In this document: one piece after another, positions 4,239 through 48,609 of the stretch | How positions within the stretch are numbered: position 1 is the stretch's first letter | Layout: each line of letters starts with the position of its first letter | Virus record (IMG/VR): IMGVR_UViG_3300024252_000004 | Coordinates: 248,001 to 312,000 of that record | Length of the DNA stretch: 64,000 nt | Strand: one strand, 5' to 3' | The notes under the pieces: model-generated | What the model saw: the letters and a program-made list of their open reading frames with translations, nothing else | What the model was told of the DNA's origin: nothing | Databases searched by the model: none | Position numbers and translations under genes: made by a program

Positions 4239-4332
4239 GGAGAGTCAATCCGAAAGCTGGCGACGGAACCGGATTTGAAACCCGGCGAGACTTTATAGGT
4301 CCTTAAGAGTTCGACCCTCTTACTCTCCGCCA
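4239..4332 (+). tRNA. tRNA-Ser(UGA)
   Basis: GGAGAGT/ACTCTCC acceptor, G73-CCA, long variable arm, loop TT-TGA-AA. Confidence 0.9.
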
Positions 4333-4826: not shown

Positions 4827-5456
4827 ATGTGGAGAGACGAAGATTTACTTGATGCAGTTAAGAGTTCCAAAAGTTATAGCTCGGTACTTAAAAGTCTTAA
4901 CATAAAATATTCTGGTCACAGGATGAGGCTTCTCAAAAAAGATATAGAAAGATTACAAATCGATGTCACTCACTTCACGAGACATAGAGTATCTGATCAA
5001 CAATTAGCTGACGCAGTTAAGATAAGCGATTCTTATGCTGATGTAATACGAAATGTCGGAACTTCAATACGTGGTTCAAATATTGATCACTATAAATCTA
5101 GAATCTTAAAACTCAACTTAGACATTTCCCATTTCTATAGCAAAAAAAGAGAGCCTTGGAATAAAGGTAAGCTTGTTGAGTATTCTAGAAAGAAAAAAGA
5201 AGACATTTTAATTAGAAGGGCTGACGGGTACAGAACTAAAGCGTACCTTTTGAGTAGGTCCATGATAGAATCTGGCTTAAAAGAAGAGTGTTTGAAATGT
5301 GGGCTTGGGAAGATATGGAACGAAAGGGAATTAGTTTTGCAAGTTGATCATATAGACGGAGATCGTTTTAATAATTTGATCGAAAACTTGAGATTCTTAT
5401 GTCCTAATTGTCATACTCAAACAAAAACGTATGGTTCAAAAAATCGGAAGGTCTGA
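4827..5456 (+). mobile_element. HNH homing endonuclease
   Basis: CLKCG...LQVDHIDGDRFNNLIENLRFLCPNCH; repeated N-terminal helical units; AT-richer than flanks. Confidence 0.9.
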
Positions 5457-5535
5457 CCTCACTGGTGCGGGGTGGTTGTCTGGAACACAATTGGTGGTAA
5501 CACATCTGTCGGTTCGAATCCGATGCCTTCCTCCG
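5446..5535 (+). tRNA. tRNA-Ser(GGA), overlapping the HNH stop codon; ends TCCG
   Basis: GGAAGGT/GCCTTCC acceptor, loop CT-GGA-AC, long variable arm, GTCGG-TTCGAAT-CCGAT. Confidence 0.75.
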
Positions 5536-35324: not shown

Positions 35325-35415
35325 AGGACTGTAGCTCAGTTTTTGGTTAGAGCGCTCGCCTGATAAGTGAGAGGCCACTTGGTATACGTTGGTTCAAATC
35401 CAACCAGTCCTACCA
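35325..35415 (+). tRNA. tRNA-Ile(GAU) with a 16-nt variable region
   Basis: Loop CT-GAT-AA; variable AGGCCACTTGGTATAC. Confidence 0.85.
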
Positions 35416-39894: not shown

Positions 39895-40175
39895 TCCTCG
39901 TCTTTATCTTCTTTCTTTTCTTTTGGAGCTTCGCCACCAAAGAGCTTTTCCATAAGCTCAGCAAAGTCGGAGGCATCCTCTGCTTCTTCTGGCATTTCTT
40001 CGCCATGACTATGTTCACATATATCAAGCGTAGGCTCATCGGGCATAGGAGATAGTCCCAAAGCAGATGCAATTTCTGCTGGATCTACTCCTTCTAAAAT
40101 CAAAATCTCTTGAGCCTCTTTTTTGAAATTAAGGCTGTAGAGGTTTCTGCTTAAACTTACAAGTTTAGTGTACAT
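39891..40175 (-). CDS. Hypothetical acidic protein, isolated on the minus strand
   Basis: SD AGGAG then MYTKLVSLSRNL. Confidence 0.65.
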   Translation of the reverse strand: MYTKLVSLSRNLYSLNFKKEAQEILILEGVDPAEIASALGLSPMPDEPTLDICEHSHGEEMPEEAEDASDFAELMEKLFGGEAPKEKKEDKDED

Positions 40176-40227
40176 AGTACTGTCACTCCTACTAAGATTA
40201 AGTATAATAGTAGGACTGGAGGTTCTA

Positions 40228-40915
40228 ATGAATTCGATCATATTGGAAATTAAAGCTGCCGAAGGCGGCACAGATGCAAAGCTCCTTGTTGATGAACAGT
40301 TGGCCATTTATAGGAGATACTGTTCTCGGAGGTCTCTTTGAGTTAGCTCTCTTAGATTCCAGAAGCGGTTTTATCAGATGCAGAGTCAGCGGCAAAAACG
40401 TCAAAAAACATTTTAGGCATGAGCCTGGAGGCCACAGATGGCAAAGGGTTCCTCCGACAGAGAGACGAGGAAGGGTTCATACTTCTACGATCACTGTCGC
40501 TGTCCTACCGGAAGTAACTGAATCTGAAGTTAAGATTAGCGAAAAAGATTTAGAATGGAAAGCCTTTAGGGGTTCTGGTCCCGGCGGTCAGCATAGAAAC
40601 AAAACTGATTCTGCTGTGTCGCTTCACCATAAGCCTACTGGAATCAAGATCCGTTCTGAATCTCAAAAGAGTCAGAAGCAGAATAAGGACACCGCTCTTG
40701 CAATATTGAGAGCGAGGTTGCATTCTGAGCAGAGAGAGTCTCAGTCTTTGCGACGCAGTAATATGAGGAAGAGCCAAGTGGGCTCAGGTATGCGCGCCGA
40801 CAAAATCAGGACGATCAGGTTGCAGGACGGACAAGTTACGGATCACAACACTGGAAAAAGAATCTCTGCGAAAAAATATTTGCGCGGAGACTTGGAAGGT
40901 CTATTTGAAAAGTAA
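40228..40915 (+). CDS. Class-1 peptide chain release factor (RF1-type PxT), programmed +1 frameshift at 40336-40341
   Basis: MNSIILEIKAAEGGTDA; GGAGG-TCT-CTT-TGA; +1 frame GGHRWQRVPPTE.RGRVHTS, GSGPGGQHRNKTDSAV, KIRT. Confidence 0.88.
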
Positions 40916-41105
40916 AGAAGCGATTGCAAAAGTGATGTTTTGGAGAATCGTAATTTCGATTCCGTTAAGCACGATAGTTACATATTTGTATTACGGTCAA
41001 CTCTTCAAGGCTATTGGGTTTGTCATCTTGATGAACGTAATGATGACGGCGGCACACTTCGCTTTTGAAAAGGTTTGGCCTAAGATTTGGAGGAAGCTTG
41101 AGTAG
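40905..41105 (+). CDS. Small membrane protein
   Basis: Two hydrophobic helices. Confidence 0.55.
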   Translation: MKSKEAIAKVMFWRIVISIPLSTIVTYLYYGQLFKAIGFVILMNVMMTAAHFAFEKVWPKIWRKLE

Positions 41106-41203
41106 AAAAGAACACTGCCGGGTTTATTGATCCTGAAATTGCCATCAGACTTGGGGCCAATCGTCAAGGTTTTGGCGGGAACTGATAAAGTTTAGAGCAA
41201 AAT

Positions 41204-41232
41204 TTGCTAAATTTCTCGCAAGATGGTATATA
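41204..41232 (+). promoter_or_regulatory. Sigma70-type promoter, repeated family
   Basis: TTGCTA-N17-TATATA with TGn. Confidence 0.65.
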
Positions 41233-41293
41233 TGATTCACGGGATCGAAACGTGCCGACGTAGTTTGGATGCCATCTTCGAAAAACAAAATAA

Positions 41294-41386
41294 TGCGGGG
41301 TCGACTAGTCTGGCCCATGTCACCAGTCTCATAAGCTGGCTCTGAGTATACCTCAATCGTTGGTTCAAATCCAACCCCCGCACCCA
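41294..41386 (+). tRNA. tRNA(CAU) with fMet-like acceptor, 19-nt variable arm and C73
   Basis: TGCGGGG/CCCCGCA acceptor, loop CT-CAT-AA, variable arm TGAG-TATAC-CTCA. Confidence 0.8.
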
Positions 41387-41398
41387 TAATAGGAAACA

Positions 41399-42315
41399 AT
41401 GAGCATCTATAGAGTTCATCACATAGATCTTTTGAATGTTCTGACTTATCTTTCTGCTTTTGATAATAATGTACTTGAAAAAATACATTGTGATGGAGAG
41501 CAGGGAAGAGTAGTAATCTTTGTAGATCCTAAAGAAATACCCAAAAAAGATCTTGATCTTATTTTGGATTGCAATTGCGAAGTGGACGAGGAAGGCTTTT
41601 TCATCCTTAAACCCACGATCATTATTGCAAAATAGTTATGTTGTTGGTACGTGGGGACATGGTGAAACTGGATATCATGTTAGCCTTCTAAGCTTAAGTT
41701 CGGGGTTCGAGTCCCTGTGTCCCTGCCATCATCTTTTTGGAGTTTTCAAATGAAGTTAGAAAAGACTCAATTGAAAGCAGGATGGACTGTGGCTCTTAGG
41801 CCGGAAGATCCTACGAGATTCCGACTTATCAACCCTGATGGGTTTGGAGTAGCCTTAATTGGCCTCAAAGGCGAATGGTGGGGCACAAGCTATAATCTGT
41901 GGGATTCCCAAGGTGAAGAACATGGATATGAGGCGATAGACCCACCTGACATGCTGAGTGCGGTCAGAAATTGTGCAGCACACTGTGGTGCTTTAAAATA
42001 TGCGAAATGTGAGGAGTTGTAATGGAATGGATTGATATTGCCCACACGATGGGCCAACATAACTTTGACGATGTATCGATTTCCACATCGTCAACCACAA
42101 GTGTCATGAACCTTTCTAACGGTTGCCTCATGCGAGAGACCACTGTTACTGCACAAGGTAGTGTAACCACTTCTCCTATTCACCTTTCCGGCGTCCGCTA
42201 TGAGAACGGAGTGCTAAGGGCTCTTACCATGAAGGAAATGCTTGGCGACGAAATGGGCGAAATGGCAGAAAAAATGTCTGGACTTACCGGAATGCTCGGA
42301 AAGTTCGGAAAGTAA
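41399..42315 (+). CDS. Three small hypothetical ORFs (41399-41635, ~41749-42022, 42022-42315)
   Basis: ORF track. Confidence 0.5.
41653..41728 (+). tRNA. tRNA-Arg(UCU)
   Basis: Loop CT-TCT-AA, GCCA end. Confidence 0.88.
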
Positions 42316-42319
42316 TCAT

Positions 42320-42395
42320 AGCTGAGTAGCTCAATCGGTAGAGCAACAGGTTCATATCCTGTAGGTTGTAGGTTCAAGCCCTATCTCAGCTACCG
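42320..42395 (+). tRNA. tRNA(CAU), elongator Met or Ile2
   Basis: AGCTGAG/CTCAGCT acceptor, loop TT-CAT-AT, ends ACCG. Confidence 0.85.
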
Positions 42396-42452
42396 TAAAG
42401 TAGAAACATAGTTTGTGTTTCATTTAAACAATCATCAAAGGGGAGAATCATA

Positions 42453-42570
42453 ATGATCACCATCTTCAACACTGACCGACGTAGTACGCTCATGTTTAGT
42501 TTAAGGACTATTCATGTCTAAGTGTGCTCTCTCGGTTAAATAAAGAATTAGCTTTCGCCGGAGAGAGCAC
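42453..42570 (+). promoter_or_regulatory. Leader uORF (22 aa) followed by a long hairpin
   Basis: SD GGAG, MITIFNTDRRSTLMFSLRTIHV*, stem GTGCTCTCTCGG/CCGGAGAGAGCAC. Confidence 0.5.
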
Positions 42571-42591
42571 GTTCACCCACAGGAGGTTAGC

Positions 42592-43647
42592 GTGTATTAC
42601 GGTGATGAAAAGAAGAAAGAAATTATGAGAAGCATTCTTCCGTCCAAATGGGCAAAGGGTGCAAGAGAAGACAAAAGAGATCTCAACAAAAAGGTGCGAA
42701 GAACAGCTAAGAATGCTCTTCGTCATATTCGGGATGCAGAAGATTGGGATGACTCAAGCTTTGATTTCTGGGATGACGGACAGGATGAGCGTAGCTCGAT
42801 TGTGTGGAACAGACGAGGGGCTGACAAGCTCTCTCACTTCATGCGCTGGGCCGAGCACACTGCCAAGGATATTCCCGATGGGGAAAAGATGGGGTACATC
42901 AAAGGACTACTTCCCGGTAAGGGAGTAATCTTTGATCACGCTTGTGGTCACCTTGAGCACCTCGATGGCTTTGATAGCGACACCTATATCTGGAGTTCTT
43001 ACTGGAGAAGAAGAGATAAGGATGTTCTTAGCAGAGCAGATCTAATTCGTCTTCTTGAGAAGGTTTGTGAGGTTCGCAAGTTCCACGGTTACCTTAACGA
43101 TGCAATTAAGAAGCGTCATAAGAAGACTTATTGGCGTCGCGTTCTTCGCATCGAAGAGTACAATCATTATAAGACTGCGCGGATTGGTGGCGAAATAGTG
43201 AAGGTTAGTCCTCCCGAAGTAAGGGTAAGGTACCATACTGACTCTCAGGATAAGACCATTGCACCTCGTCAGCTTATGGGTATGTACGACGTTGAGAATT
43301 TCGTTGATGATATTATTTGCGTTTCCAAGTGCAAAGAGTGGATTGATAAGTCTGGGTACCGAAGTCGGGTCAGAAATCCAAACGTAAGATATTCTTGGGA
43401 GCAGGGTTCCTACCGGTTTATGGACGGGAAGGTTCCCAATCCTGATTACCATCCCGAATGGATTGAGACTGTCAAATACTTCATCGAAGATTTTCTTAAA
43501 AATACTCATAAGCTTAAGGGGTTCAGCGTCTTTACTTCGTTCAGAAGAAGAACTTATGATTGGGAGAACTCAGATCCGCGCAGGTCTAAATTTGTCTGGA
43601 GGACGGACAGAGTTAAGCGTAGCTACGTCTACGATTGGAAACTTTAA
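42592..43647 (+). CDS. Basic hypothetical protein
   Basis: SD AGGAGG, GTG start. Confidence 0.75.
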   Translation: MYYGDEKKKEIMRSILPSKWAKGAREDKRDLNKKVRRTAKNALRHIRDAEDWDDSSFDFWDDGQDERSSIVWNRRGADKLSHFMRWAEHTAKDIPDGEKMGYIKGLLPGKGVIFDHACGHLEHLDGFDSDTYIWSSYWRRRDKDVLSRADLIRLLEKVCEVRKFHGYLNDAIKKRHKKTYWRRVLRIEEYNHYKTARIGGEIVKVSPPEVRVRYHTDSQDKTIAPRQLMGMYDVENFVDDIICVSKCKEWIDKSGYRSRVRNPNVRYSWEQGSYRFMDGKVPNPDYHPEWIETVKYFIEDFLKNTHKLKGFSVFTSFRRRTYDWENSDPRRSKFVWRTDRVKRSYVYDWKL

Positions 43648-43686
43648 TTTGCTTTATCCTTTACTACCCAGTAGTAAAGGATATAT

Positions 43687-43763
43687 GGCCCCATAGTCTA
43701 ATTGGATAAGGCACTTGATTACGAATCAAGAAACTGCAAGTTCGAATCTTGCTGGGGCTACCA
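43687..43763 (+). tRNA. tRNA-Arg(ACG)
   Basis: Loop TT-ACG-AA; preceded by a perfect 13-bp hairpin at 43655-43683. Confidence 0.9.
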
Positions 43764-43780
43764 TTGCAAATGAGGGAATA

Positions 43781-45548
43781 ATGAGCATTGAAGATCACGA
43801 ACTCTTATCACTACCATTCATCAAAAGGGTGTATAATCCTAATGAGAAAGTGGGATATAAGAGGTTCAAAATAGTTGAAACCAATTATGGTTTTGACTAT
43901 AAGATCCGAGGAGACATTTGCTCCCCCATTATGCGGTTTCGAAAAAACGGATATAACTTCAAAGGTAGAAAGGGACCTGTTGATTTCCAAGTTGTATTAG
44001 ATACTGTCCCTGAAGAATATATTGCGTTTCTCATCTTCTGCCAGGAAGTATTTGATTATGAAGAATCTGAAAATTGGTAAAGAAATGCTGTACGCACCCA
44101 TAGTTTAATCGGCCAAAACGCTTCCTTGGTAAGGAAGTAATATGAGTTCAAGTCTCGTTGGGTGCTCCATACAGCAAAGTATGGAGAGAAGAATTGTTAT
44201 TTGAATACGCTGATCTTGAAAATTATAATGAAATGATTTCGGAAATGGGGCAAGAAGAAAGGATAGGCTTTGAAGACCTGTTCGGTTTTTTTGAAATAGA
44301 CATAGTAGAACATAGGGATGCTTTGAAAAAAGAACTCACCTATACTGGAAGCGATGTTGTGTATCACAACTATGAGGTAAAAGGGACAAACATTATATTT
44401 TGCCTGCTTAAGGCAGATTCCGAATCAATGAAGCACGTTTTCAAAAAAATTGAGTTTTTCGAAAAGGGTCTTCATATTAAGGTAGTTCCATTTGAAATGG
44501 TCATTGATCATCTTCCTGAAAATATGTGCGAACATCTCATCATACAGATAGGGAGGCTATTCCGTGAAGACAGAATTTGAACATCTTATGGATGATATAG
44601 ACAAATCACAGTTCTTCGTTAGAGATTCCATTTACTCTATTGAGCCAATTTGGTACTATGCAGATTTCGAGATTAAGGCGAAGAATAGGAAATTTAGTAG
44701 CTTTGCTTATCTTCTAATGAAGATCGAGCTAACTGGAAATATAACTTGGCTTGTGACTAATAGGCCAAATGGTATTTCTTTCAAAAATAATCACGGGCTC
44801 AAATCTGTTTCTAAAGAATACGCTATCGATGTCTTGTCGGAAGATGAAAGTGTTCTTTCTAAATTTGCAGAACTAACTCCCGTTATATTTAAGTGATCCA
44901 TGTCTAAAAACTCAAAGCTATACGTAACAGGAAAGACCGAAGACGGCAGACCAATGATTGGTGGCTGGTTCGCTATGGTGGCGACATATGGTATCCCAAT
45001 AGATACAGTTATCAGTTATCTGGACGACTCGGGGCACATGCCAGATTGGTTAGAGTTTTACTTTACCGCCGTTAGTGAGGGATGGAACGCAAAGCGTACC
45101 ATAGGGAGACTGAGGCAAGCCGTTGCCGACGTTTACGGACCAGAGTTCAGAGAAGGCTGGTCTGAAAGGTTCGAACCAATTCTAAAAAGATTAGAGGTAG
45201 AAAATGAGCGAGAAAGAAAGTGTTCTGGAGACTCTGGCTGAAGAGCTTAGAGCAAATCCCGAAGGAGCTATTATGCTTCTTGAGGCAATGACAAATGTTG
45301 TGAGGCCATGGGAAAGTTTAAGAAGCGAAGGTCAGTCTGTCATGCACGCATATAGAAGGCTTACCGCGATGGGTGTAGAGGTTGCTTTAATCGAAAGCAG
45401 CGCACCCACATGGATTCTAACTATTGGAGGCGAACGTTTTACAGGCGGCAAAGTCTTCAATAGAAAGGGTGCCGAAGTTGAAGCTAAGGCTTTGCTTGAT
45501 GCAGAGTTAGCAGAGCGAGGTTTTGTTCTCATGGATTCGCAAGCATGA
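43781..45548 (+). CDS. Five hypothetical ORFs (~43781-44080, within 44158-44580, 44564-44896, 44900-45241, 45204-45548)
   Basis: ORF track; starts adjusted to avoid the tRNA genes. Confidence 0.55.
44094..44169 (+). tRNA. tRNA-Thr(GGU)
   Basis: Loop TT-GGT-AA, U73-CCA. Confidence 0.9.
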
Positions 45549-45581
45549 TAAAAGCCGGGTAATCGGTTTTAGAAGCGAATT

Positions 45582-45610
45582 TTTCTAAATTTCTCGTAGG
45601 ATGTTATAGA
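45582..45610 (+). promoter_or_regulatory. Sigma70-type promoter, repeated family
   Basis: TTTCTA-N17-TATAGA with TGn. Confidence 0.6.
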
Positions 45611-45671
45611 AAAAATAGATACGGTTTTGCTTTTAACCTTCGTCATGCGTAGGATAAAAGCACCGTTTAAT

Positions 45672-45759
45672 GGGTCGTTATCCCGTAGGGGCAGCGGTGG
45701 AGACTGTAAATCTCCTGTCATTATTGACTCGGTTGGTTCGACTCCAGCACGGCCCACCA
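45672..45759 (+). tRNA. tRNA-Tyr(GUA)
   Basis: Loop CT-GTA-AA, long variable arm, ACCA end. Confidence 0.9.
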
Positions 45760-45850
45760 TATTTGTGAAGCGATACATCGATAAACACTGACCACGGCTA
45801 CGGGCGGGATGATGAAGGGGCAGTAGCCTGTCCCAAATCGCTCACAAATA
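45760..45850 (+). ncRNA. Candidate structured RNA with an H-type pseudoknot
   Basis: Closing stem TATTTGTGA.GCGAT/ATCGCTCACAAATA; GGCTAC/GTAGCC; GGGATG/TGTCCC. Confidence 0.6.
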
Positions 45851-45857
45851 TACTTTC

Positions 45858-45921
45858 GGGACAGTCTCTTGTAGGAAAGATTACGCGCGTGACATCGGTT
45901 CAATTCCGATCTGTTCCACCA
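45858..45921 (+). ncRNA. 64-nt anticodon-less tRNA-like RNA with alanine identity
   Basis: GGGACAG/CTGTTCC (G3-U70), A73-CCA, T-arm ATCGG-TTCAATT-CCGAT; only 29 nt between acceptor and T-arm. Confidence 0.75.
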
Positions 45922-46433
45922 CTGAATCGTCCATCACCTGATAGGAAGTGATCAACTTCGTGACAGGTCGGACAAACAATCTCTAAGTTCTCAATCGAGT
46001 TATTCTCTCTATTGCGATCTTTATGATGAACTTGTAGAACTTCAGGATGCTTATCGTATCCGCAATGAGAGCATATCTGTTCAAGATGCTCTTTTGCAGT
46101 TTTGCGATAATCCTTTCGGTTATCAGTATAGTGCGGCGGATGAATTTCTTTTATCCCTCCTATCCTTTGTGCAATATCTTTGCAATTTCTTGAGCAAAAA
46201 ACAAATCCGCTTTTAGATGCAGCAATCTTAGAGGCAGACCTGTAAAAGTCTTTATCACAAATAGCACAAACACAATTTGGCTTTTGTATCTTCGGATTTT
46301 TCTTTCTCCATTCAAAAGAGCATTTGCGATTGCAAAATTTTGCGTTTCCTCTGTTTAATTCTTTAATTTCTGCATCAAATTGCGTATAACAATTTAAGCA
46401 ACTTTTCTTAATGGTTCTACCTTTGTAAGACAT
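45900..46433 (-). mobile_element. HNH homing endonuclease with N-terminal Zn-finger repeats
   Basis: FCNRKC, FCSRNC, CSHCG...LQVHHKDRNRENNSIENLEIVCPTCH. Confidence 0.88.
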
Positions 46434-46454
46434 AATAAATTCCTTTAATTATAT

Positions 46455-46530
46455 GGGGCCTTAGCTCAATTGGGAGAGCGCGACATTTGCAATGTCGAGG
46501 TCGCGAGTTCGATCCTCGCAGGCTCCACCA
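46455..46530 (+). tRNA. tRNA-Ala(UGC)
   Basis: GGGGCCT/AGGCTCC acceptor, loop TT-TGC-AA. Confidence 0.93.
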
Positions 46531-46589
46531 TGCAAATCAATTATACTCCACCGCAGAGTATAACACATAATTAAAGTAAGACTACACAT

Positions 46590-46609
46590 TCTCCCTTAGC
46601 TCAGTTGGT
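46590..46609 (+). pseudogene. 5' fragment of a disrupted tRNA gene
   Basis: TCTCCCT-TAGCTCAGTTGGT ends at the HNH stop codon. Confidence 0.6.
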
Positions 46610-47094
46610 TAATTCCATTTTGGTTTTAACTTATAGTGTTCTTCTCTGTGGCAGTTTGCACACAGCATGACGCATTTGTCAAGTTCAGCTTTAATGGTAT
46701 CCCAGGCATAAGTATTCCCAGAGCCAATGCCGAAATCTTTCTCGTTTGGTTCTAAATGGTGAAAATCAAATGCATCAATACATTTGTCATATCCACAATA
46801 CTCGCACTTTTCTCCTTTATATTCTACGGCTTTAATCTTACACTGCCATCTTCTTTTTTGCACATAGTACTTGTTCTTACACTTTTTTGAGCAAAATTTT
46901 CCTGAAGATGGCAAGTCACACAAATGCCATGTGCATTCCAAAGCTTTTGACTTTTCTTTATTTTTTGGAGAAGTTGATAGTCCAAATTTCTTAAGCCAAT
47001 GACGAACATTTGTTTGCGAGCAAGATAGCTCTTTTGCGATTTCTCTGGTAGAATAATTATTATCAACTAATAACTTTAAAGTTTCTAATTCCAT
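46609..47094 (-). mobile_element. HNH homing endonuclease with N-terminal HTH
   Basis: STREIAKELSCSQTNVRHWL; CEYCGY...FDFHH...KCVMLCANCHREEH. Confidence 0.88.
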
Positions 47095-47134
47095 AGTTCA
47101 CCTCATGTAATTATATGAGGTTAATAATAGATGA

Positions 47135-47221
47135 GCTACTGTGGCCGAGCGGTTGAAGGCAGCAGGCTGTTAACCTGCCTGGGAAACCACATCATAGGTT
47201 CAAATCCTATCGGTAGCGCCA
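47135..47221 (+). tRNA. tRNA-Asn(GUU) on a class II-like body
   Basis: Loop CT-GTT-AA; variable arm TGG-GAAA-CCA; G73. Confidence 0.85.
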
Positions 47222-47248
47222 AATTTAATAAGAGGCTGAACATGAGCC

Positions 47249-47497
47249 TTGCAGGGAGAGCCAATTATTAAAGAATCAGATAAGAATAATGGAGTATGCT
47301 ATCCGGCAACGTCGATCAAAGTGATTCCCCTTGTTGAGGGAATTAGATTGCGGCCGAAGATGTACGGTTTGACAGAAGATCAGGTATCCAATATGAGTGA
47401 TCAGATGATCAAAGATTGGTACGAAGATTGTGAAAACGTATGCGAGCATGATTTAGATATTGCGAGAGTGTCGGACACCTTTGATCCCAGCGGGTAG
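47249..47497 (+). CDS. Small protein carrying a GyrB/ParE N-terminal-like motif
   Basis: YPATSIKVIPLVEGIRLRPKMYG. Confidence 0.5.
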   Translation: MQGEPIIKESDKNNGVCYPATSIKVIPLVEGIRLRPKMYGLTEDQVSNMSDQMIKDWYEDCENVCEHDLDIARVSDTFDPSG

Positions 47498-47671
47498 GGG
47501 TCGAGATAACGCGGTCAAGTAGAGTTCCCAAAGGGCTGTTTATGATACGGTCACAATCGAACGACCTAGAGTTATACCTGATTTGAATTCGGGCAATGGG
47601 CTGGCCAATAGTCCTTAGACGTAATCCTGTTGAAGTCGTCGCAGGTCCCACTTGAGGGTTGTTTTGGACAT

Positions 47672-47747
47672 GGGTGCTTAGTGTCAACGGCAAGCACGAT
47701 TGGCTGTTAACCAATTAGTTTGGGTTCAAATCCCAAAGTACCCGCCA
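47672..47747 (+). tRNA. tRNA-Asn(GUU), canonical body
   Basis: Loop CT-GTT-AA, G73-CCA. Confidence 0.9.
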
Positions 47748-48053
47748 CAAAGTATCAAAAGGTTTTGTCATTATGAAAGAGATTTTTGGACCTTGGGTTA
47801 AGGCTGCAAGGTGTTTGGATTGCGACGACGGCTTTAAAAGCAAATGGAGTGCCTGGATTGAAGAAAGTGATTTTGATACAGAGGAAGAGATGTTGGGGCA
47901 AACTCTCATCTGCCGCTCATGTGGCTCGATATTCAAATGGCAAAAAGCTGTCGGAAGAAAAATCAAAACGTATAAAACATCTTGGATTTTTCTTGACAAA
48001 TTGGTTAAAAGCGAATGGGAATGGCGACACGAAGCTGTTCTGGAAGGAATAAA

Positions 48054-48473
48054 TTGAAAAGAGTTTATGTTGATATGGACGGAGTCCTTTGTGATTACGT
48101 TGCAAAATTTACAGAACTCCGTAACGAAGGAAACAAGTTTCCTCAGCAAAGCTTTGACTTCTTCAGAAGTATGAAGCCTATGCCATCGGCTCTTGCAGCT
48201 ATGGGAATACTATCTAAACATTTCGATGTTTGGATTTTGACTAAGCCTTCCTACAAAAACCCTATGTCTTATACAGAAAAGAGACTTTGGGTTGAGGACC
48301 ATCTTGGTCTGGATTGGTGTAAGAAGCTGATCCTTTGTCCTGATAAGGGATTGGTTATAGGAGATTATCTTATTGATGATTTCTTGTGGCCTGAATTTCA
48401 AGGTGAACAAGTTCATTTTGGTTCAAATAGATTTCCAAATTGGAGATCGGTAATAGATTATATGCGCCCGTGA
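48054..48473 (+). CDS. 5'(3')-deoxyribonucleotidase (NT5C-like HAD)
   Basis: YVDMDGVLCD, WILTKP, EKRLWVEDHLG, GDYLIDD. Confidence 0.88.
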   Translation: MKRVYVDMDGVLCDYVAKFTELRNEGNKFPQQSFDFFRSMKPMPSALAAMGILSKHFDVWILTKPSYKNPMSYTEKRLWVEDHLGLDWCKKLILCPDKGLVIGDYLIDDFLWPEFQGEQVHFGSNRFPNWRSVIDYMRP

Positions 48474-48554
48474 GCCGAGTGGTTGATGGCCCCAGACTCT
48501 TAATCTGGTACAGGTAGTGCTGCAACGTAGGTTCGAATCCTACCGGGCGTACCA
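48464..48554 (+). tRNA. tRNA-Lys(CUU) on a class II-like body
   Basis: Loop CT-CTT-AA; 18-nt variable region; A73. Confidence 0.85.
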
Positions 48555-48609
48555 TATAAAACGATAACATAAATATATGAGCAGTTCATTTTAAATAGCG
48601 GAGACTTAG

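What the first reader, a model, noticed from the sequence alone, without database searches (positions are those of the whole stretch)
45900..47221. Antisense HNH pair in the tRNA array, with apparent replacement of a tRNA
Seen: HNH 46609-47094 stops exactly at a 20-nt orphan tRNA 5' fragment (TCTCCCTTAGCTCAGTTGGT) and is followed by the long-arm tRNA-Asn. Its RBS lies in hairpin ACCTCAT/ATGAGGT. HNH 45900-46433 stops inside the T-loop of the Ala mini-RNA on the opposite strand. Inference: the endonuclease destroyed a canonical tRNA (probably Asn) and carries a cleavage-resistant substitute, a route by which odd tRNAs could spread.
Basis: partly seen in the sequence, partly recalled or inferred. 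Interest (0 to 1): 0.6.

Follow-up and report, generated by a model that had tools for sequence, protein, structure and literature searches.

The report
HNH genes inside a broken tRNA-Asn
In the tRNA gene array of a 395-kb marine phage, a mobile-type HNH nuclease gene and an unusual long-armed tRNA-Asn sit together inside the remains of an ordinary host-type tRNA-Asn gene, a relic of nuclease-linked tRNA replacement, a process already known in outline from phage T4 SegB.

Summary
Both minus-strand ORFs are intact HNH endonuclease genes. The orphan piece is 22 nt long (46590-46611). It is identical to the 5' end of the tRNA-Asn(GUU) of Bacteroidota and of many marine phages. I also found the matching 3' end (47244-47263; the last 13 nt are exact, with G73 and CCA). 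It lies on the far side of the long-arm tRNA-Asn. So HNH2 and the long-arm tRNA-Asn are nested inside one dead tRNA-Asn gene.

HNH2 belongs to a family that sits in phage tRNA arrays in 15 of 16 other viral contigs. In Klebsiella jumbo phages a tRNA-Asn plus HNH2-like pair is a ~0.7-kb insertion with an empty site in RaK2. The long-arm tRNA-Asn is a conserved lineage with a covarying extra arm, found in unrelated phages (4MG, Jiaodavirus, Muenster).

HNH1 shows the same layout. A host-type Ala mini-tRNA lies at its 3' end and a divergent tRNA-Ala at its 5' end.

No close relative or empty allele of this phage was found. Cleavage specificity and resistance of the substitute tRNA gene are untested. 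The mechanism closely parallels T4 SegB, so this is a new variant of a known kind.

The parts
45858..45921 (+). 64-nt Ala-type mini tRNA-like RNA: 7-bp acceptor stem with G3:U70, A73, CCA and a canonical T-arm, but no anticodon arm
   Evidence: Sequence and fold. Its T-stem ATCGG/CCGAT is the one found in tRNA-Ala genes, or a tRNA-like element beside them, at all 8 places in three Flavobacteriia genomes. No exact copy in other viral contigs.
45900..46433 (-). HNH1, a free-standing HNH endonuclease gene (177 aa). Its last 22 nt run antisense into the mini-RNA and it stops in the T-loop.
   Evidence: Pfam HNH_3 28.2 bits; PHROG 1271 E 8e-21. GC 0.369 against 0.438 for the genome. Homologues in huge and crAss-like phages.
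46441..46458 (.). 18-nt element upstream of the HNH1 start, containing TAATTATATGGGG (TATAAT on the HNH strand). It is repeated upstream of HNH2 and, inverted, at 46564-46579.
   Evidence: the repeat finder D5 and I2; motif counts.
46455..46530 (+). tRNA-Ala(UGC), divergent from HNH1 (21 nt between the gene starts) and not of host type
   Evidence: ARAGORN; Rfam 67.5 bits; comparison with Flavobacteriia tRNA-Ala.
46590..46611 (+). 5' stub of a dead host-type tRNA-Asn(GUU): acceptor 5' strand, U8-A9, D-stem 5' strand and D-loop
   Evidence: 22/22 identity to intact tRNA-Asn genes of phages and Bacteroidota. Preceded by the ACAT leader typical of this array.
46609..47094 (-). HNH2, a free-standing HTH+HNH endonuclease gene (161 aa), full length. 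Its stop codon is formed at the junction with the stub.
   Evidence: Pfam HNH 24.4 bits; PHROG 2255 E 8e-31. Alignment A1 shows the invariant Cys/His/Asn residues and a C-terminus of normal length. GC 0.348.
47100..47121 (-). Hairpin that sequesters the HNH2 ribosome-binding site, with a TATAAT-like element in its loop and 3' arm
   Evidence: Fold -12.6 kcal/mol, z -3.3; repeat D5.
47135..47221 (+). Long-arm (class-II-shaped) tRNA-Asn(GUU) with G73 and encoded CCA, divergent from HNH2 (40 nt between the gene starts)
   Evidence: ARAGORN; Rfam tRNA 59.4 bits. Homologues in unrelated phages with a covarying extra arm. The D-arm is 22 nt identical to E. coli tRNA-Ser.
47244..47263 (+). 3' stub of the same dead tRNA-Asn: GAGC, five nt, acceptor 3' strand AGGGAGA, G73 and CCA. 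The last 13 nt are exact.
   Evidence: AGGGAGAGCCA occurs once in the window, expected 0.06. The 13 nt are identical to the L012 tRNA-Asn 3' end. Joined to the 5' stub it gives a 7-bp acceptor stem.
47672..47747 (+). Second, normal-length tRNA-Asn(GUU) of a different sequence type (context only)
   Evidence: ARAGORN; Rfam 58.6 bits.

Best explanation
The region holds two tandem cassettes of one design. Each is a free-standing HNH homing-endonuclease-type gene on the minus strand, with a tRNA gene starting 21-40 nt from its start codon on the plus strand. Each lies next to the remains of a host-type (Bacteroidota-type) tRNA of the same amino acid.

The second cassette is HNH2 plus a long-arm tRNA-Asn, about 630 bp. 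It occupies the interior of a formerly ordinary tRNA-Asn(GUU) gene. Only the first 22 nt and the last 13-20 nt of that gene remain.

Most likely route (inferred): a double-strand break or nick in the tRNA-Asn gene was repaired so that the cassette was copied or captured there. The cut would have been made by an HNH enzyme of this tRNA-array-associated family. The allele then persists and can spread to co-infecting relatives by recombination-dependent, intronless homing, as with T4 SegB.

AAY decoding is kept by the cassette's own tRNA-Asn and by a second tRNA-Asn 450 bp downstream. Their D- and T-arm sequences differ from those of the destroyed gene.

HNH2 translation is probably restrained by a hairpin over its ribosome-binding site, and released in transcripts that start at the TATAAT-like element inside that hairpin (inferred).
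For: Shown:
- Both HNH genes are intact.
- The stubs nest around HNH2 and the long-arm tRNA-Asn.
- The stubs are of the Bacteroidota and marine-phage tRNA-Asn type.
- The 5' stub keeps this array's typical ACAT leader and the 3' stub keeps the encoded CCA typical of this phage, so the dead gene was a resident gene.
- HNH2 homologues have a tRNA gene within the 3-kb flanks in 15 of 16 other viral contigs. In 11 of 16 their stop codon lies from 23 nt inside to 36 nt before a tRNA 5' end.
- Adjacent tRNA-Asn genes recur: L023, L032, L037, Yersinia phage fHe-Yen9-04, and Klebsiella phages Muenster and KP13-7.
- Muenster L105:1246-1942 (long-arm tRNA-Asn plus HNH2-like gene) is an insertion relative to RaK2, where the flanks are contiguous. 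RaK2 carries a different HNH plus tRNA-Asn 88 bp away, and a 49-nt broken tRNA-Asn copy.
- Both HNH genes are low in GC and lie antisense to the surrounding + strand tRNA array.
- Both share an 18-nt upstream element.

Precedent: SegB's preferred cut is in a tRNA-Asn gene of T2L. It co-converts flanking tRNA genes and has an RBS-occluding hairpin (PMC2330249).
Against: - No HNH-less allele of this phage was found, so mobility here is inferred from other phages.
- In all other loci examined the HNH2-family gene is co-oriented with the tRNAs and sits between intact genes, not inside one.
- In RaK2 the empty site is not a tRNA gene.
- Close homologues of the long-arm tRNA-Asn lie in compact arrays with no adjacent HNH2-type gene: 4MG, L109, L042.
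- GAGC in the 3' stub could be either the D-stem strand or the T-loop end. The central deletion may therefore predate the insertion, as in the L019 mini-tRNA.
- No sigma-70-type promoter was detected for either HNH gene.
Confidence: 0.6

Rival explanations
1. Passive rearrangement. tRNA genes share short repeats, such as GGTT[A/C]GAGC in the D and T arms, and are hot spots for illegitimate recombination. On this reading the tRNA-Asn gene was broken and filled by such events. The HNH genes are only selfish or domesticated neighbours that neither made the break nor move the tRNA.
For: L019 carries the same tRNA-Asn with a D-loop-to-T-loop deletion and no detectable HNH1/HNH2 homologue nearby. 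The joined stubs look like such a mini-tRNA. The long-arm tRNA-Asn occurs without an HNH in 4MG, L109 and L042.
Against: The same layout (HNH, substitute tRNA, host-type remnant of the same identity) appears twice in tandem here and again in RaK2. The HNH2 family is strongly tied to tRNA genes, often overlapping them by exactly 10 nt. The tRNA-Asn plus HNH pair is a single indel in Alcyoneusvirus.
Confidence: 0.25
2. The HNH genes serve the phage rather than themselves. For example, they might cut the tRNA or rRNA-operon regions of the host or of competing phages, or promote amplification of tRNA loci under pressure from tRNA-targeting defences. The broken tRNA-Asn would be a by-product.
For: The stubs and the Ala mini-RNA are of host (Bacteroidota) type. 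SegB was recently shown to drive amplification of a tRNA-Tyr segment to escape Septu (PMC13096335). The genome keeps six HNH genes.
Against: No tandem amplification is present here. Nothing indicates host-DNA targeting. Presence/absence polymorphism in Alcyoneusvirus fits selfish mobility.
Confidence: 0.1
3. The two stubs are not relics but parts of a functional RNA: a split or intron-containing tRNA, or a deliberately made mini-helix.
For: The stubs are perfectly conserved and can pair into a 7-bp acceptor stem ending in G73-CCA. This genome has other mini or odd tRNA-like genes.
Against: The anticodon arm is absent. No group I intron or other RNA family was found in 40000-52000 at E<=1. The intervening 630 nt hold an antisense protein gene and a complete tRNA.
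Confidence: 0.05

Closest known systems
Phage T4 SegB, a free-standing GIY-YIG homing endonuclease in the T4 tRNA gene cluster (PMC2330249; PMC13096335)
   Same: A nuclease gene sits between tRNA genes. Its cut sites lie in tRNA genes and the preferred one is in a tRNA-Asn gene. The region it replaces differs in tRNA gene content. An RBS-occluding hairpin lies at the 5' end of the ORF. SegB homologues are statistically associated with tRNA genes in many phages.
   Different: A different nuclease fold (HNH, not GIY-YIG). Here the gene is antisense to the tRNAs. A dead target gene survives as two stubs around the cassette. The co-carried tRNA has a long extra arm. Cleavage has not been tested here.
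[quoted passage not shown]
   Same: Site-specific endonuclease ORFs located among phage tRNA genes. That they are HNH-type is from my own knowledge.
   Different: No sequence comparison was made here. No broken target tRNA or substitute tRNA is reported, to my knowledge.
tRNA-Asn plus HNH cassettes of Klebsiella jumbo phages (Alcyoneusvirus: Muenster, KP13-7, RaK2). These are annotated in GenBank but I found no description of them.
   Same: An HNH2-family gene (45-58% identity) lies next to a tRNA-Asn, which is long-armed in Muenster. The ~0.7-kb unit is present or absent between phages that are 95-97% identical in the flanks. RaK2 has a broken tRNA-Asn copy beside its own HNH plus tRNA-Asn.
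   Different: The HNH gene and tRNA are co-oriented. The insertion site in RaK2 is not a tRNA gene. The hosts are Enterobacteriaceae, not marine Bacteroidota.
Translational control of phage homing endonucleases by RBS-sequestering hairpins (I-TevI/II/III and MobE, as summarised in PMC2330249)
   Same: A 7-bp hairpin covers the Shine-Dalgarno sequence of HNH2, and a TATAAT-like element lies inside the hairpin.
   Different: Promoter use and timing are unknown here. HNH1 has the shared upstream element but no stable hairpin.
Class II tRNAs (Leu, Ser, bacterial Tyr), which have a long variable arm (PMC9976931)
   Same: The substitute tRNA has a Ser-like D-arm, with 22 nt identical to E. coli tRNA-Ser, and a base-paired extra arm.
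   Different: The anticodon is GUU and the discriminator is G73, the two known AsnRS identity elements. No cellular class II tRNA-Asn is known to me, and none was found in 301 sampled genomes of the class containing Rasiella sp..

Membership tests
HNH (His-Me finger) endonucleases, Pfam PF01844 / PF13392 | Profile match above the curated cut-off | tested here: met
   HNH1: HNH_3 28.2 bits against a 24.8 cut-off. HNH2: HNH 24.4 bits against 21.4. PHROG HNH families E 8e-21 and 8e-31.
HNH (His-Me finger) endonucleases, Pfam PF01844 / PF13392 | Catalytic His...Asn...His and the two CxxC zinc pairs are intact | tested here: met
   Alignment A1: C97, C100, H112, H113, C145, N147, C148, H149 and H153 of HNH2 are invariant. 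HNH1 aligns through CSHCGYDK...HH...CPTCH.
Free-standing homing endonuclease genes (SegB / F-Tfl / MobE kind) | Nuclease domain joined to a DNA-binding module, not inside an intron or intein | tested here: met
   HNH2 has an N-terminal HTH (several Pfam HTH models, E about 1e-3) followed by HNH. No group I intron in 40000-52000.
Free-standing homing endonuclease genes (SegB / F-Tfl / MobE kind) | Presence/absence polymorphism between otherwise near-identical genomes | tested here: inconclusive
   For this phage, only identical copies were found and the nearest relatives are at or below 53% amino-acid identity. For the family, it is met in Alcyoneusvirus.
Free-standing homing endonuclease genes (SegB / F-Tfl / MobE kind) | Site-specific cleavage of the allele that lacks the gene, with immunity of the carrier allele | not testable with these tools
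   Needs purified enzyme and DNA substrates.
Free-standing homing endonuclease genes (SegB / F-Tfl / MobE kind) | Biased inheritance with co-conversion of flanking markers in mixed infection | not testable with these tools
   Needs phage crosses. No cultured isolate of this phage is known from these data.
Intron-encoded homing endonuclease in a tRNA group I intron | A group I ribozyme around the ORF and complete tRNA exons | tested here: not met
   No Intron_gpI match at E<=1. The same model does find the intron in the Muenster tRNA-Met, at 104 bits.
tRNA-Asn (the substitute gene 47135-47221) | Cloverleaf scoring as a tRNA; GUU anticodon and G73 discriminator (AsnRS identity set, PMC9976931) | tested here: met
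   Rfam tRNA 59.4 bits against a 29 cut-off; ARAGORN finds GTT and G73. All six aligned homologues keep GTT and G73.
tRNA-Asn (the substitute gene 47135-47221) | Charged with asparagine and used in translation | not testable with these tools
   The Ser-like D-arm and long arm leave serylation possible. This needs aminoacylation assays or tRNA sequencing.
Class II (long variable arm) tRNA architecture | A base-paired extra arm conserved by compensatory changes | tested here: met
   RNAalifold on 6 homologues: the three extra-arm pairs each show changes on both sides that keep the pair.
Host-type (Bacteroidota) tRNA-Asn, the dead gene | Sequence identity of both ends to intact genes | tested here: met
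   5' end 22/22; 3' end 13/13 with L012. The 26-mer prefix occurs in 41 species genomes, nearly all Bacteroidota.

The most novel reading that the evidence does not exclude
Phage tRNA arrays may be shaped by an arms race. HNH endonucleases of this family would cut host-like tRNA genes. The alleles that survive and spread would be structurally odd tRNAs that the nuclease, and perhaps host tRNA-cleaving defences too, no longer recognise. The long-arm tRNA-Asn lineage, and maybe the long-arm Lys, Ile and Met tRNAs and the mini-tRNAs of this genome, would be such alleles. On this reading the HNH plus tRNA pair is a two-gene mobile unit that moves non-canonical tRNAs between unrelated phages and leaves dead host-type tRNA genes behind.
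Probability: 0.25. Interest if true: 0.7.

Novelty: new variant of a known kind. Interest (0 to 1): 0.45.

Why it matters
Homing endonucleases in phage tRNA clusters are known to drag neighbouring tRNA genes along. Physical relics of such an event have, to my knowledge, not been described. Here the destroyed target gene is still recognisable on both sides of a nuclease-plus-tRNA insert.

The locus links three things:
- a tRNA-array-specific HNH family;
- turnover of tRNA-Asn alleles, also visible in cultured Klebsiella jumbo phages, where it can be tested by crosses;
- a widespread but apparently undiscussed class-II-shaped tRNA-Asn lineage present in easily grown phages (4MG, Jiaodavirus).

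It also gives a host clue for an uncultured 395-kb marine phage: Bacteroidota.

If the odd tRNAs are nuclease- or defence-resistant alleles, that would help explain why large phages carry so many non-canonical tRNAs.

Tried and rejected
Empty allele search, all negative:
- The flanking 299-aa protein found only the same phage in IMG/VR.
- The flanking 152-aa protein found relatives at or below 53% identity in metagenome contigs. Only one had a tRNA array, and it was not syntenic.
- Contigs of four seawater runs laid on 44900-48500 showed no joints or variants. Depth was only 3-5x, so this has little power.

Other searches that found nothing useful:
- Group I intron or any other Rfam family across the stubs: none. 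ARAGORN with introns allowed: nothing.
- Exact search for the mini-RNA 3' half in viral contigs: only the same phage.
- Exact 21-nt anticodon-arm pattern of the long-arm tRNA-Asn: only this phage, 4MG and L109, so the pattern is too strict to measure distribution.
- L109 as a possible relative: rejected. Only the tRNA-Asn and HNH domains match the genome.
- Sigma-70-type promoters for the HNH genes: none above shuffles.
- CATATAATTA as a general phage promoter: rejected. It occurs four times in the genome, and the two copies away from the HNH genes precede no open reading frame.
- Other minus-strand ORFs of the window as further mobile genes: no Pfam hits.
- Solved structures: no significant sequence match for either HNH.
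- Long-arm tRNA-Asn in 301 sampled genomes of the class containing Rasiella sp.: only partial matches. One was to a 71-nt tRNA-Asn in a phage-like 17-tRNA array.
- Literature searches for a description of long-arm phage tRNA-Asn found nothing.

Alternative identity considered and rejected: the 5' stub as a partial duplicate of the neighbouring tRNA-Ala. It matches tRNA-Ala at 14/15 over CCTTAGCTCA[A/G]TTGG but only about 15 of 22 overall, against 22/22 for tRNA-Asn.

Not used, because the families were clear: the large protein searches, structure prediction and complex prediction.
Full report
**Setting.** The window is bases 248001-312000 of a 395,127-bp IMG/VR virus record rated complete. The record carries 44 tRNA genes and a tmRNA, most of them in a plus-strand array across the window. 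The DNA occurs in many seawater metagenomes. A second IMG/VR contig is 99.99% identical over 20.9 kb. Contigs from four further runs bridge every junction discussed here without a single difference. The structure is therefore real, not an assembly artefact.

**The observation.**
- HNH1 (45900-46433, minus strand, 177 aa) and HNH2 (46609-47094, minus strand, 161 aa) pass Pfam's curated HNH cut-offs and match PHROG HNH families at E 8e-21 and 8e-31. HNH2 also has an N-terminal helix-turn-helix.
- The two proteins are only distantly related: 24% identity over the HNH core.
- In an alignment with ten homologues, HNH2 keeps every invariant Cys, His and Asn and has a C-terminus of normal length. The gene is complete, and its stop codon lies exactly at the junction with the tRNA fragment.
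- Both genes are low in GC (0.35-0.37 against 0.44) and lie antisense to the surrounding + strand tRNA array.
- The hairpin ACCTCAT/ATGAGGT (47100-47121) folds at -12.6 kcal/mol on the HNH2 mRNA strand (z -3.3) and holds the GAGGU ribosome-binding site in its 3' arm.
- The HNH1 stop (complement of 45900-45902) lies in the T-loop of a 64-nt tRNA-like RNA (45858-45921). That RNA has a 7-bp acceptor stem with G3:U70, A73, CCA and a canonical T-arm, but no anticodon arm.

**What the orphan fragment is.**
- An exact search of IMG/VR with the 20-mer found 18 contigs other than this phage. In 15 of them it is the first 20 nt of a 75-nt tRNA-Asn(GTT). Identity with the window runs 22 nt, to the D-loop.
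- The 26-nt prefix of the intact gene occurs in 41 species genomes, almost all Bacteroidota (Flavobacteriales, Crocinitomicaceae, Fluviicola, Bacteroidales and others). In every complete copy but one (L147) it begins a tRNA-Asn(GUU).
The dead gene was of the host-like type shared by Bacteroidota and many marine phages.

**The missing 3' end.**
- The complement of the stub's acceptor strand, followed by G73 and CCA (AGGGAGAGCCA), occurs once in the window, at 47253-47263 on the same strand. The expected count is 0.06 per 64 kb.
- With two further bases it is identical to the last 13 nt of the L012 tRNA-Asn. Similarity extends back to GAGC at 47244.
- This end lies downstream of the long-arm tRNA-Asn. 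The order is: 5' stub, HNH2 (antisense), long-arm tRNA-Asn, 22-nt spacer, 3' stub.
- HNH2 and the substitute tRNA are thus nested inside one dead gene. That is hard to explain unless they arrived there as one insert or in close succession.
- The 5' stub keeps the ACAT leader seen before many tRNAs of this array. The 3' stub keeps the encoded CCA typical of this phage and absent from the cellular genes. So the dead gene was a resident phage gene.
- One ambiguity remains. The canonical gene contains GGTT[A/C]GAGC in both its D and T arms. The GAGC of the 3' stub may belong to either. A D-to-T internal deletion, as seen in contig L019, may have preceded the insertion.

**The HNH2 family.**
- Homologues (39-63% identity over the C-terminal half) were found in 16 other IMG/VR contigs, and 15 of them have a tRNA gene within the 3-kb flanks.
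- In 11 contigs the HNH stop lies from 23 nt inside to 36 nt before the 5' end of a same-strand tRNA. In four the overlap is exactly 10 nt, so the tRNA's U8-A9-G10 serves as the TAG stop.
- A third HNH gene in the window (4827-5456, plus strand) ends 11 nt inside tRNA-Ser(GGA). The genome has six HNH genes in all.
- tblastn finds the family in 417 cultured phage records. The full-length matches examined lie among tRNA genes, several of them next to tRNA-Asn.

**The most useful comparison: the Klebsiella jumbo phages (Alcyoneusvirus).**
- In Muenster, an 84-nt long-arm tRNA-Asn plus an HNH2-like gene (L105:1246-1942) form a ~0.7-kb insertion relative to RaK2. In RaK2 the flanks, 95-97% identical, are contiguous.
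- KP13-7 has a 75-nt tRNA-Asn plus an HNH2-like gene at the same site.
- RaK2 instead carries an unrelated HNH gene followed 9 nt later by its own tRNA-Asn, 88 bp away. It also has a 49-nt internally deleted tRNA-Asn copy with the same acceptor stem.
- Each phage keeps exactly one intact tRNA-Asn, tied to its own HNH gene.
- This is the empty-site evidence that could not be obtained for the marine phage. It shows that HNH plus tRNA-Asn pairs turn over as units.

**The long-arm tRNA-Asn.**
- It scores as a tRNA (59.4 bits) and has GUU and G73, the known AsnRS identity elements (PMC9976931). It has a 3-bp extra arm with a GAAA loop.
- Its D-arm is identical over 22 nt to E. coli tRNA-Ser.
- Homologues occur in:
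  - Escherichia phage 4MG and its relatives;
  - IMG/VR contig L109, the closest, which also shares part of the 3' trailer;
  - contig L042;
  - Klebsiella phage Muenster;
  - Jiaodavirus phages, with roughly 170 weaker-matching records in that search.
- L109 shares nothing else with this genome except HNH domains, so the gene has moved between unrelated phages.
- In an alignment of six homologues, all three extra-arm pairs show compensatory changes.
- Short-armed versions of the same lineage exist: KP13-7, and a 71-nt gene in a phage-like array in a Bacteroidia-class genome.
- No full-length match was found in 301 sampled genomes of that class.
- The tRNA is therefore a real, conserved, horizontally spreading phage tRNA. 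Several homologues have no HNH beside them, so HNH carriage is one route at most.

**The parallel at HNH1.**
- The Ala mini-RNA at the HNH1 3' end has the T-stem ATCGG/CCGAT. In three Flavobacteriia genomes that T-arm occurs at 8 places. Six lie in tRNA-Ala genes and two in a tRNA-like element beside one.
- The tRNA-Ala(UGC) gene starts 21 nt from the HNH1 start and is of a different sequence type.
- Both HNH genes thus have a host-type remnant of a given identity at their 3' end and a divergent tRNA of the same identity at their 5' end.
- Both share an 18-nt upstream element containing TATAAT on the HNH strand (46441-46458 and 47103-47120). A third, inverted copy lies at 46564-46579, just before the Asn stub.
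- I cannot explain the inverted pair around tRNA-Ala.

**Mechanism, and what is shown versus inferred.**
- Shown: intact HNH genes; a dead host-type tRNA-Asn split around HNH2 plus a substitute tRNA-Asn; family-wide linkage to tRNA genes; presence/absence of an equivalent cassette in cultured phages.
- Inferred: that an HNH enzyme made the break; that the cassette spreads by recombination-dependent homing in mixed infections; that the substitute gene is not cut; that the hairpin delays translation until transcription starts at the TATAAT-like element inside it.
- These inferences follow the T4 SegB case closely. SegB lies in the tRNA cluster, recognises the T-arm motif GGTTCRANTCC, prefers a site in the T2L tRNA-Asn gene, replaces a region with different tRNA content and has an RBS-occluding hairpin (PMC2330249). 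SegB homologues are enriched next to tRNA genes and can amplify a tRNA-Tyr segment to escape Septu (PMC13096335). Phage T5 also has endonuclease ORFs in its tRNA cluster (PMC2330249, reference 18).

**Verdict.** It is a new variant of a known kind, with an HNH nuclease instead of GIY-YIG, antisense orientation, a preserved relic of the target and a class-II-shaped substitute tRNA. Interest is moderate. The part that could grow is the link between tRNA-array nucleases and the non-canonical tRNAs of large phages, which can be tested in cultured Klebsiella and Escherichia phages.

Noticed in passing
window 4239-4332; 54781-54895; 61889-61994; genome 211857-212015 and about 208612-208677 (outside the window): tRNA-like genes that ARAGORN does not call. 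Each has a canonical T-arm, a 7-nt 3' acceptor strand, a discriminator and CCA. 4239-4332 looks like a 94-nt tRNA-Ser(UGA). 211857-212015 has Leu-like ends and an internal insert of about 80 nt.
   Followed up: partly
window 35325-35415 (Ile), 41294-41386 (Met), 48464-48554 (Lys CUU): Three more over-long tRNAs for amino acids that normally have short-arm tRNAs. Ile and Met each sit near a normal-length tRNA with the same anticodon; Lys(CUU) sits near a normal-length Lys(UUU). Phage 4MG also has an 84-nt tRNA-Lys beside its long tRNA-Asn.
   Followed up: partly
window 54460-54537: A tRNA with anticodon CUA (amber-suppressor type, called 'Pyl' by ARAGORN). The two HNH genes end in TGA and TAA, so their ORFs do not depend on the reading of TAG.
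   Followed up: no
window 4827-5456 (+) and 5446-5534: A third HNH gene, on the plus strand, ends 11 nt inside tRNA-Ser(GGA). In other phages, HNH2-family genes overlap the next tRNA by exactly 10 nt and use its U8-A9-G10 as the TAG stop (L028, L029, L031, L032).
   Followed up: partly
window 46440-46455 and 46564-46579: A 16-nt inverted repeat (88% complementary) flanks tRNA-Ala(UGC). One arm is the element upstream of HNH1. The other lies 10 nt before the tRNA-Asn 5' stub. Unexplained.
   Followed up: partly
L019:9969-10010; L009 and L021: L019 carries the same host-type tRNA-Asn with a D-loop-to-T-loop internal deletion (a mini-tRNA). L009 (IMG/VR) and L021 (a giant-virus MAG contig) carry it with an insert of about 10 nt after the anticodon.
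   Followed up: no
L105:867-1115 (Klebsiella phage Muenster): A group I intron (Rfam 104 bits) interrupts the anticodon loop of tRNA-Met in Muenster. RaK2 has the uninterrupted gene (L110:559-636).
   Followed up: partly
L110:1619-1667 (Klebsiella phage RaK2, record 179945-179993): A 49-nt internally deleted tRNA-Asn copy with the same acceptor stem as the intact tRNA-Asn 173 nt upstream. It lies beside an unrelated HNH gene and partly under the annotated ORF220w.
   Followed up: yes
window 46590-46611, 47244-47263, 45894-45910: The dead tRNA-Asn and the T-stem of the Ala mini-RNA are of Bacteroidota type. This suggests a marine Bacteroidota (Flavobacteriales-like) host for this uncultured 395-kb phage.
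   Followed up: partly
L160:433-2210 (a Bacteroidia-class genome, G034): A dense 17-tRNA array that looks like a phage or prophage inside a bacterial assembly. It includes a 71-nt tRNA-Asn whose 5' half matches the long-arm tRNA-Asn at 89%.
   Followed up: no
L155 about 1480-1530 (Rasiella sp. chromosome, beside tRNA-Ala): An uncalled tRNA-like element with the tRNA-Ala T-arm lies about 130 nt from a tRNA-Ala gene in a Flavobacteriia genome.
   Followed up: no
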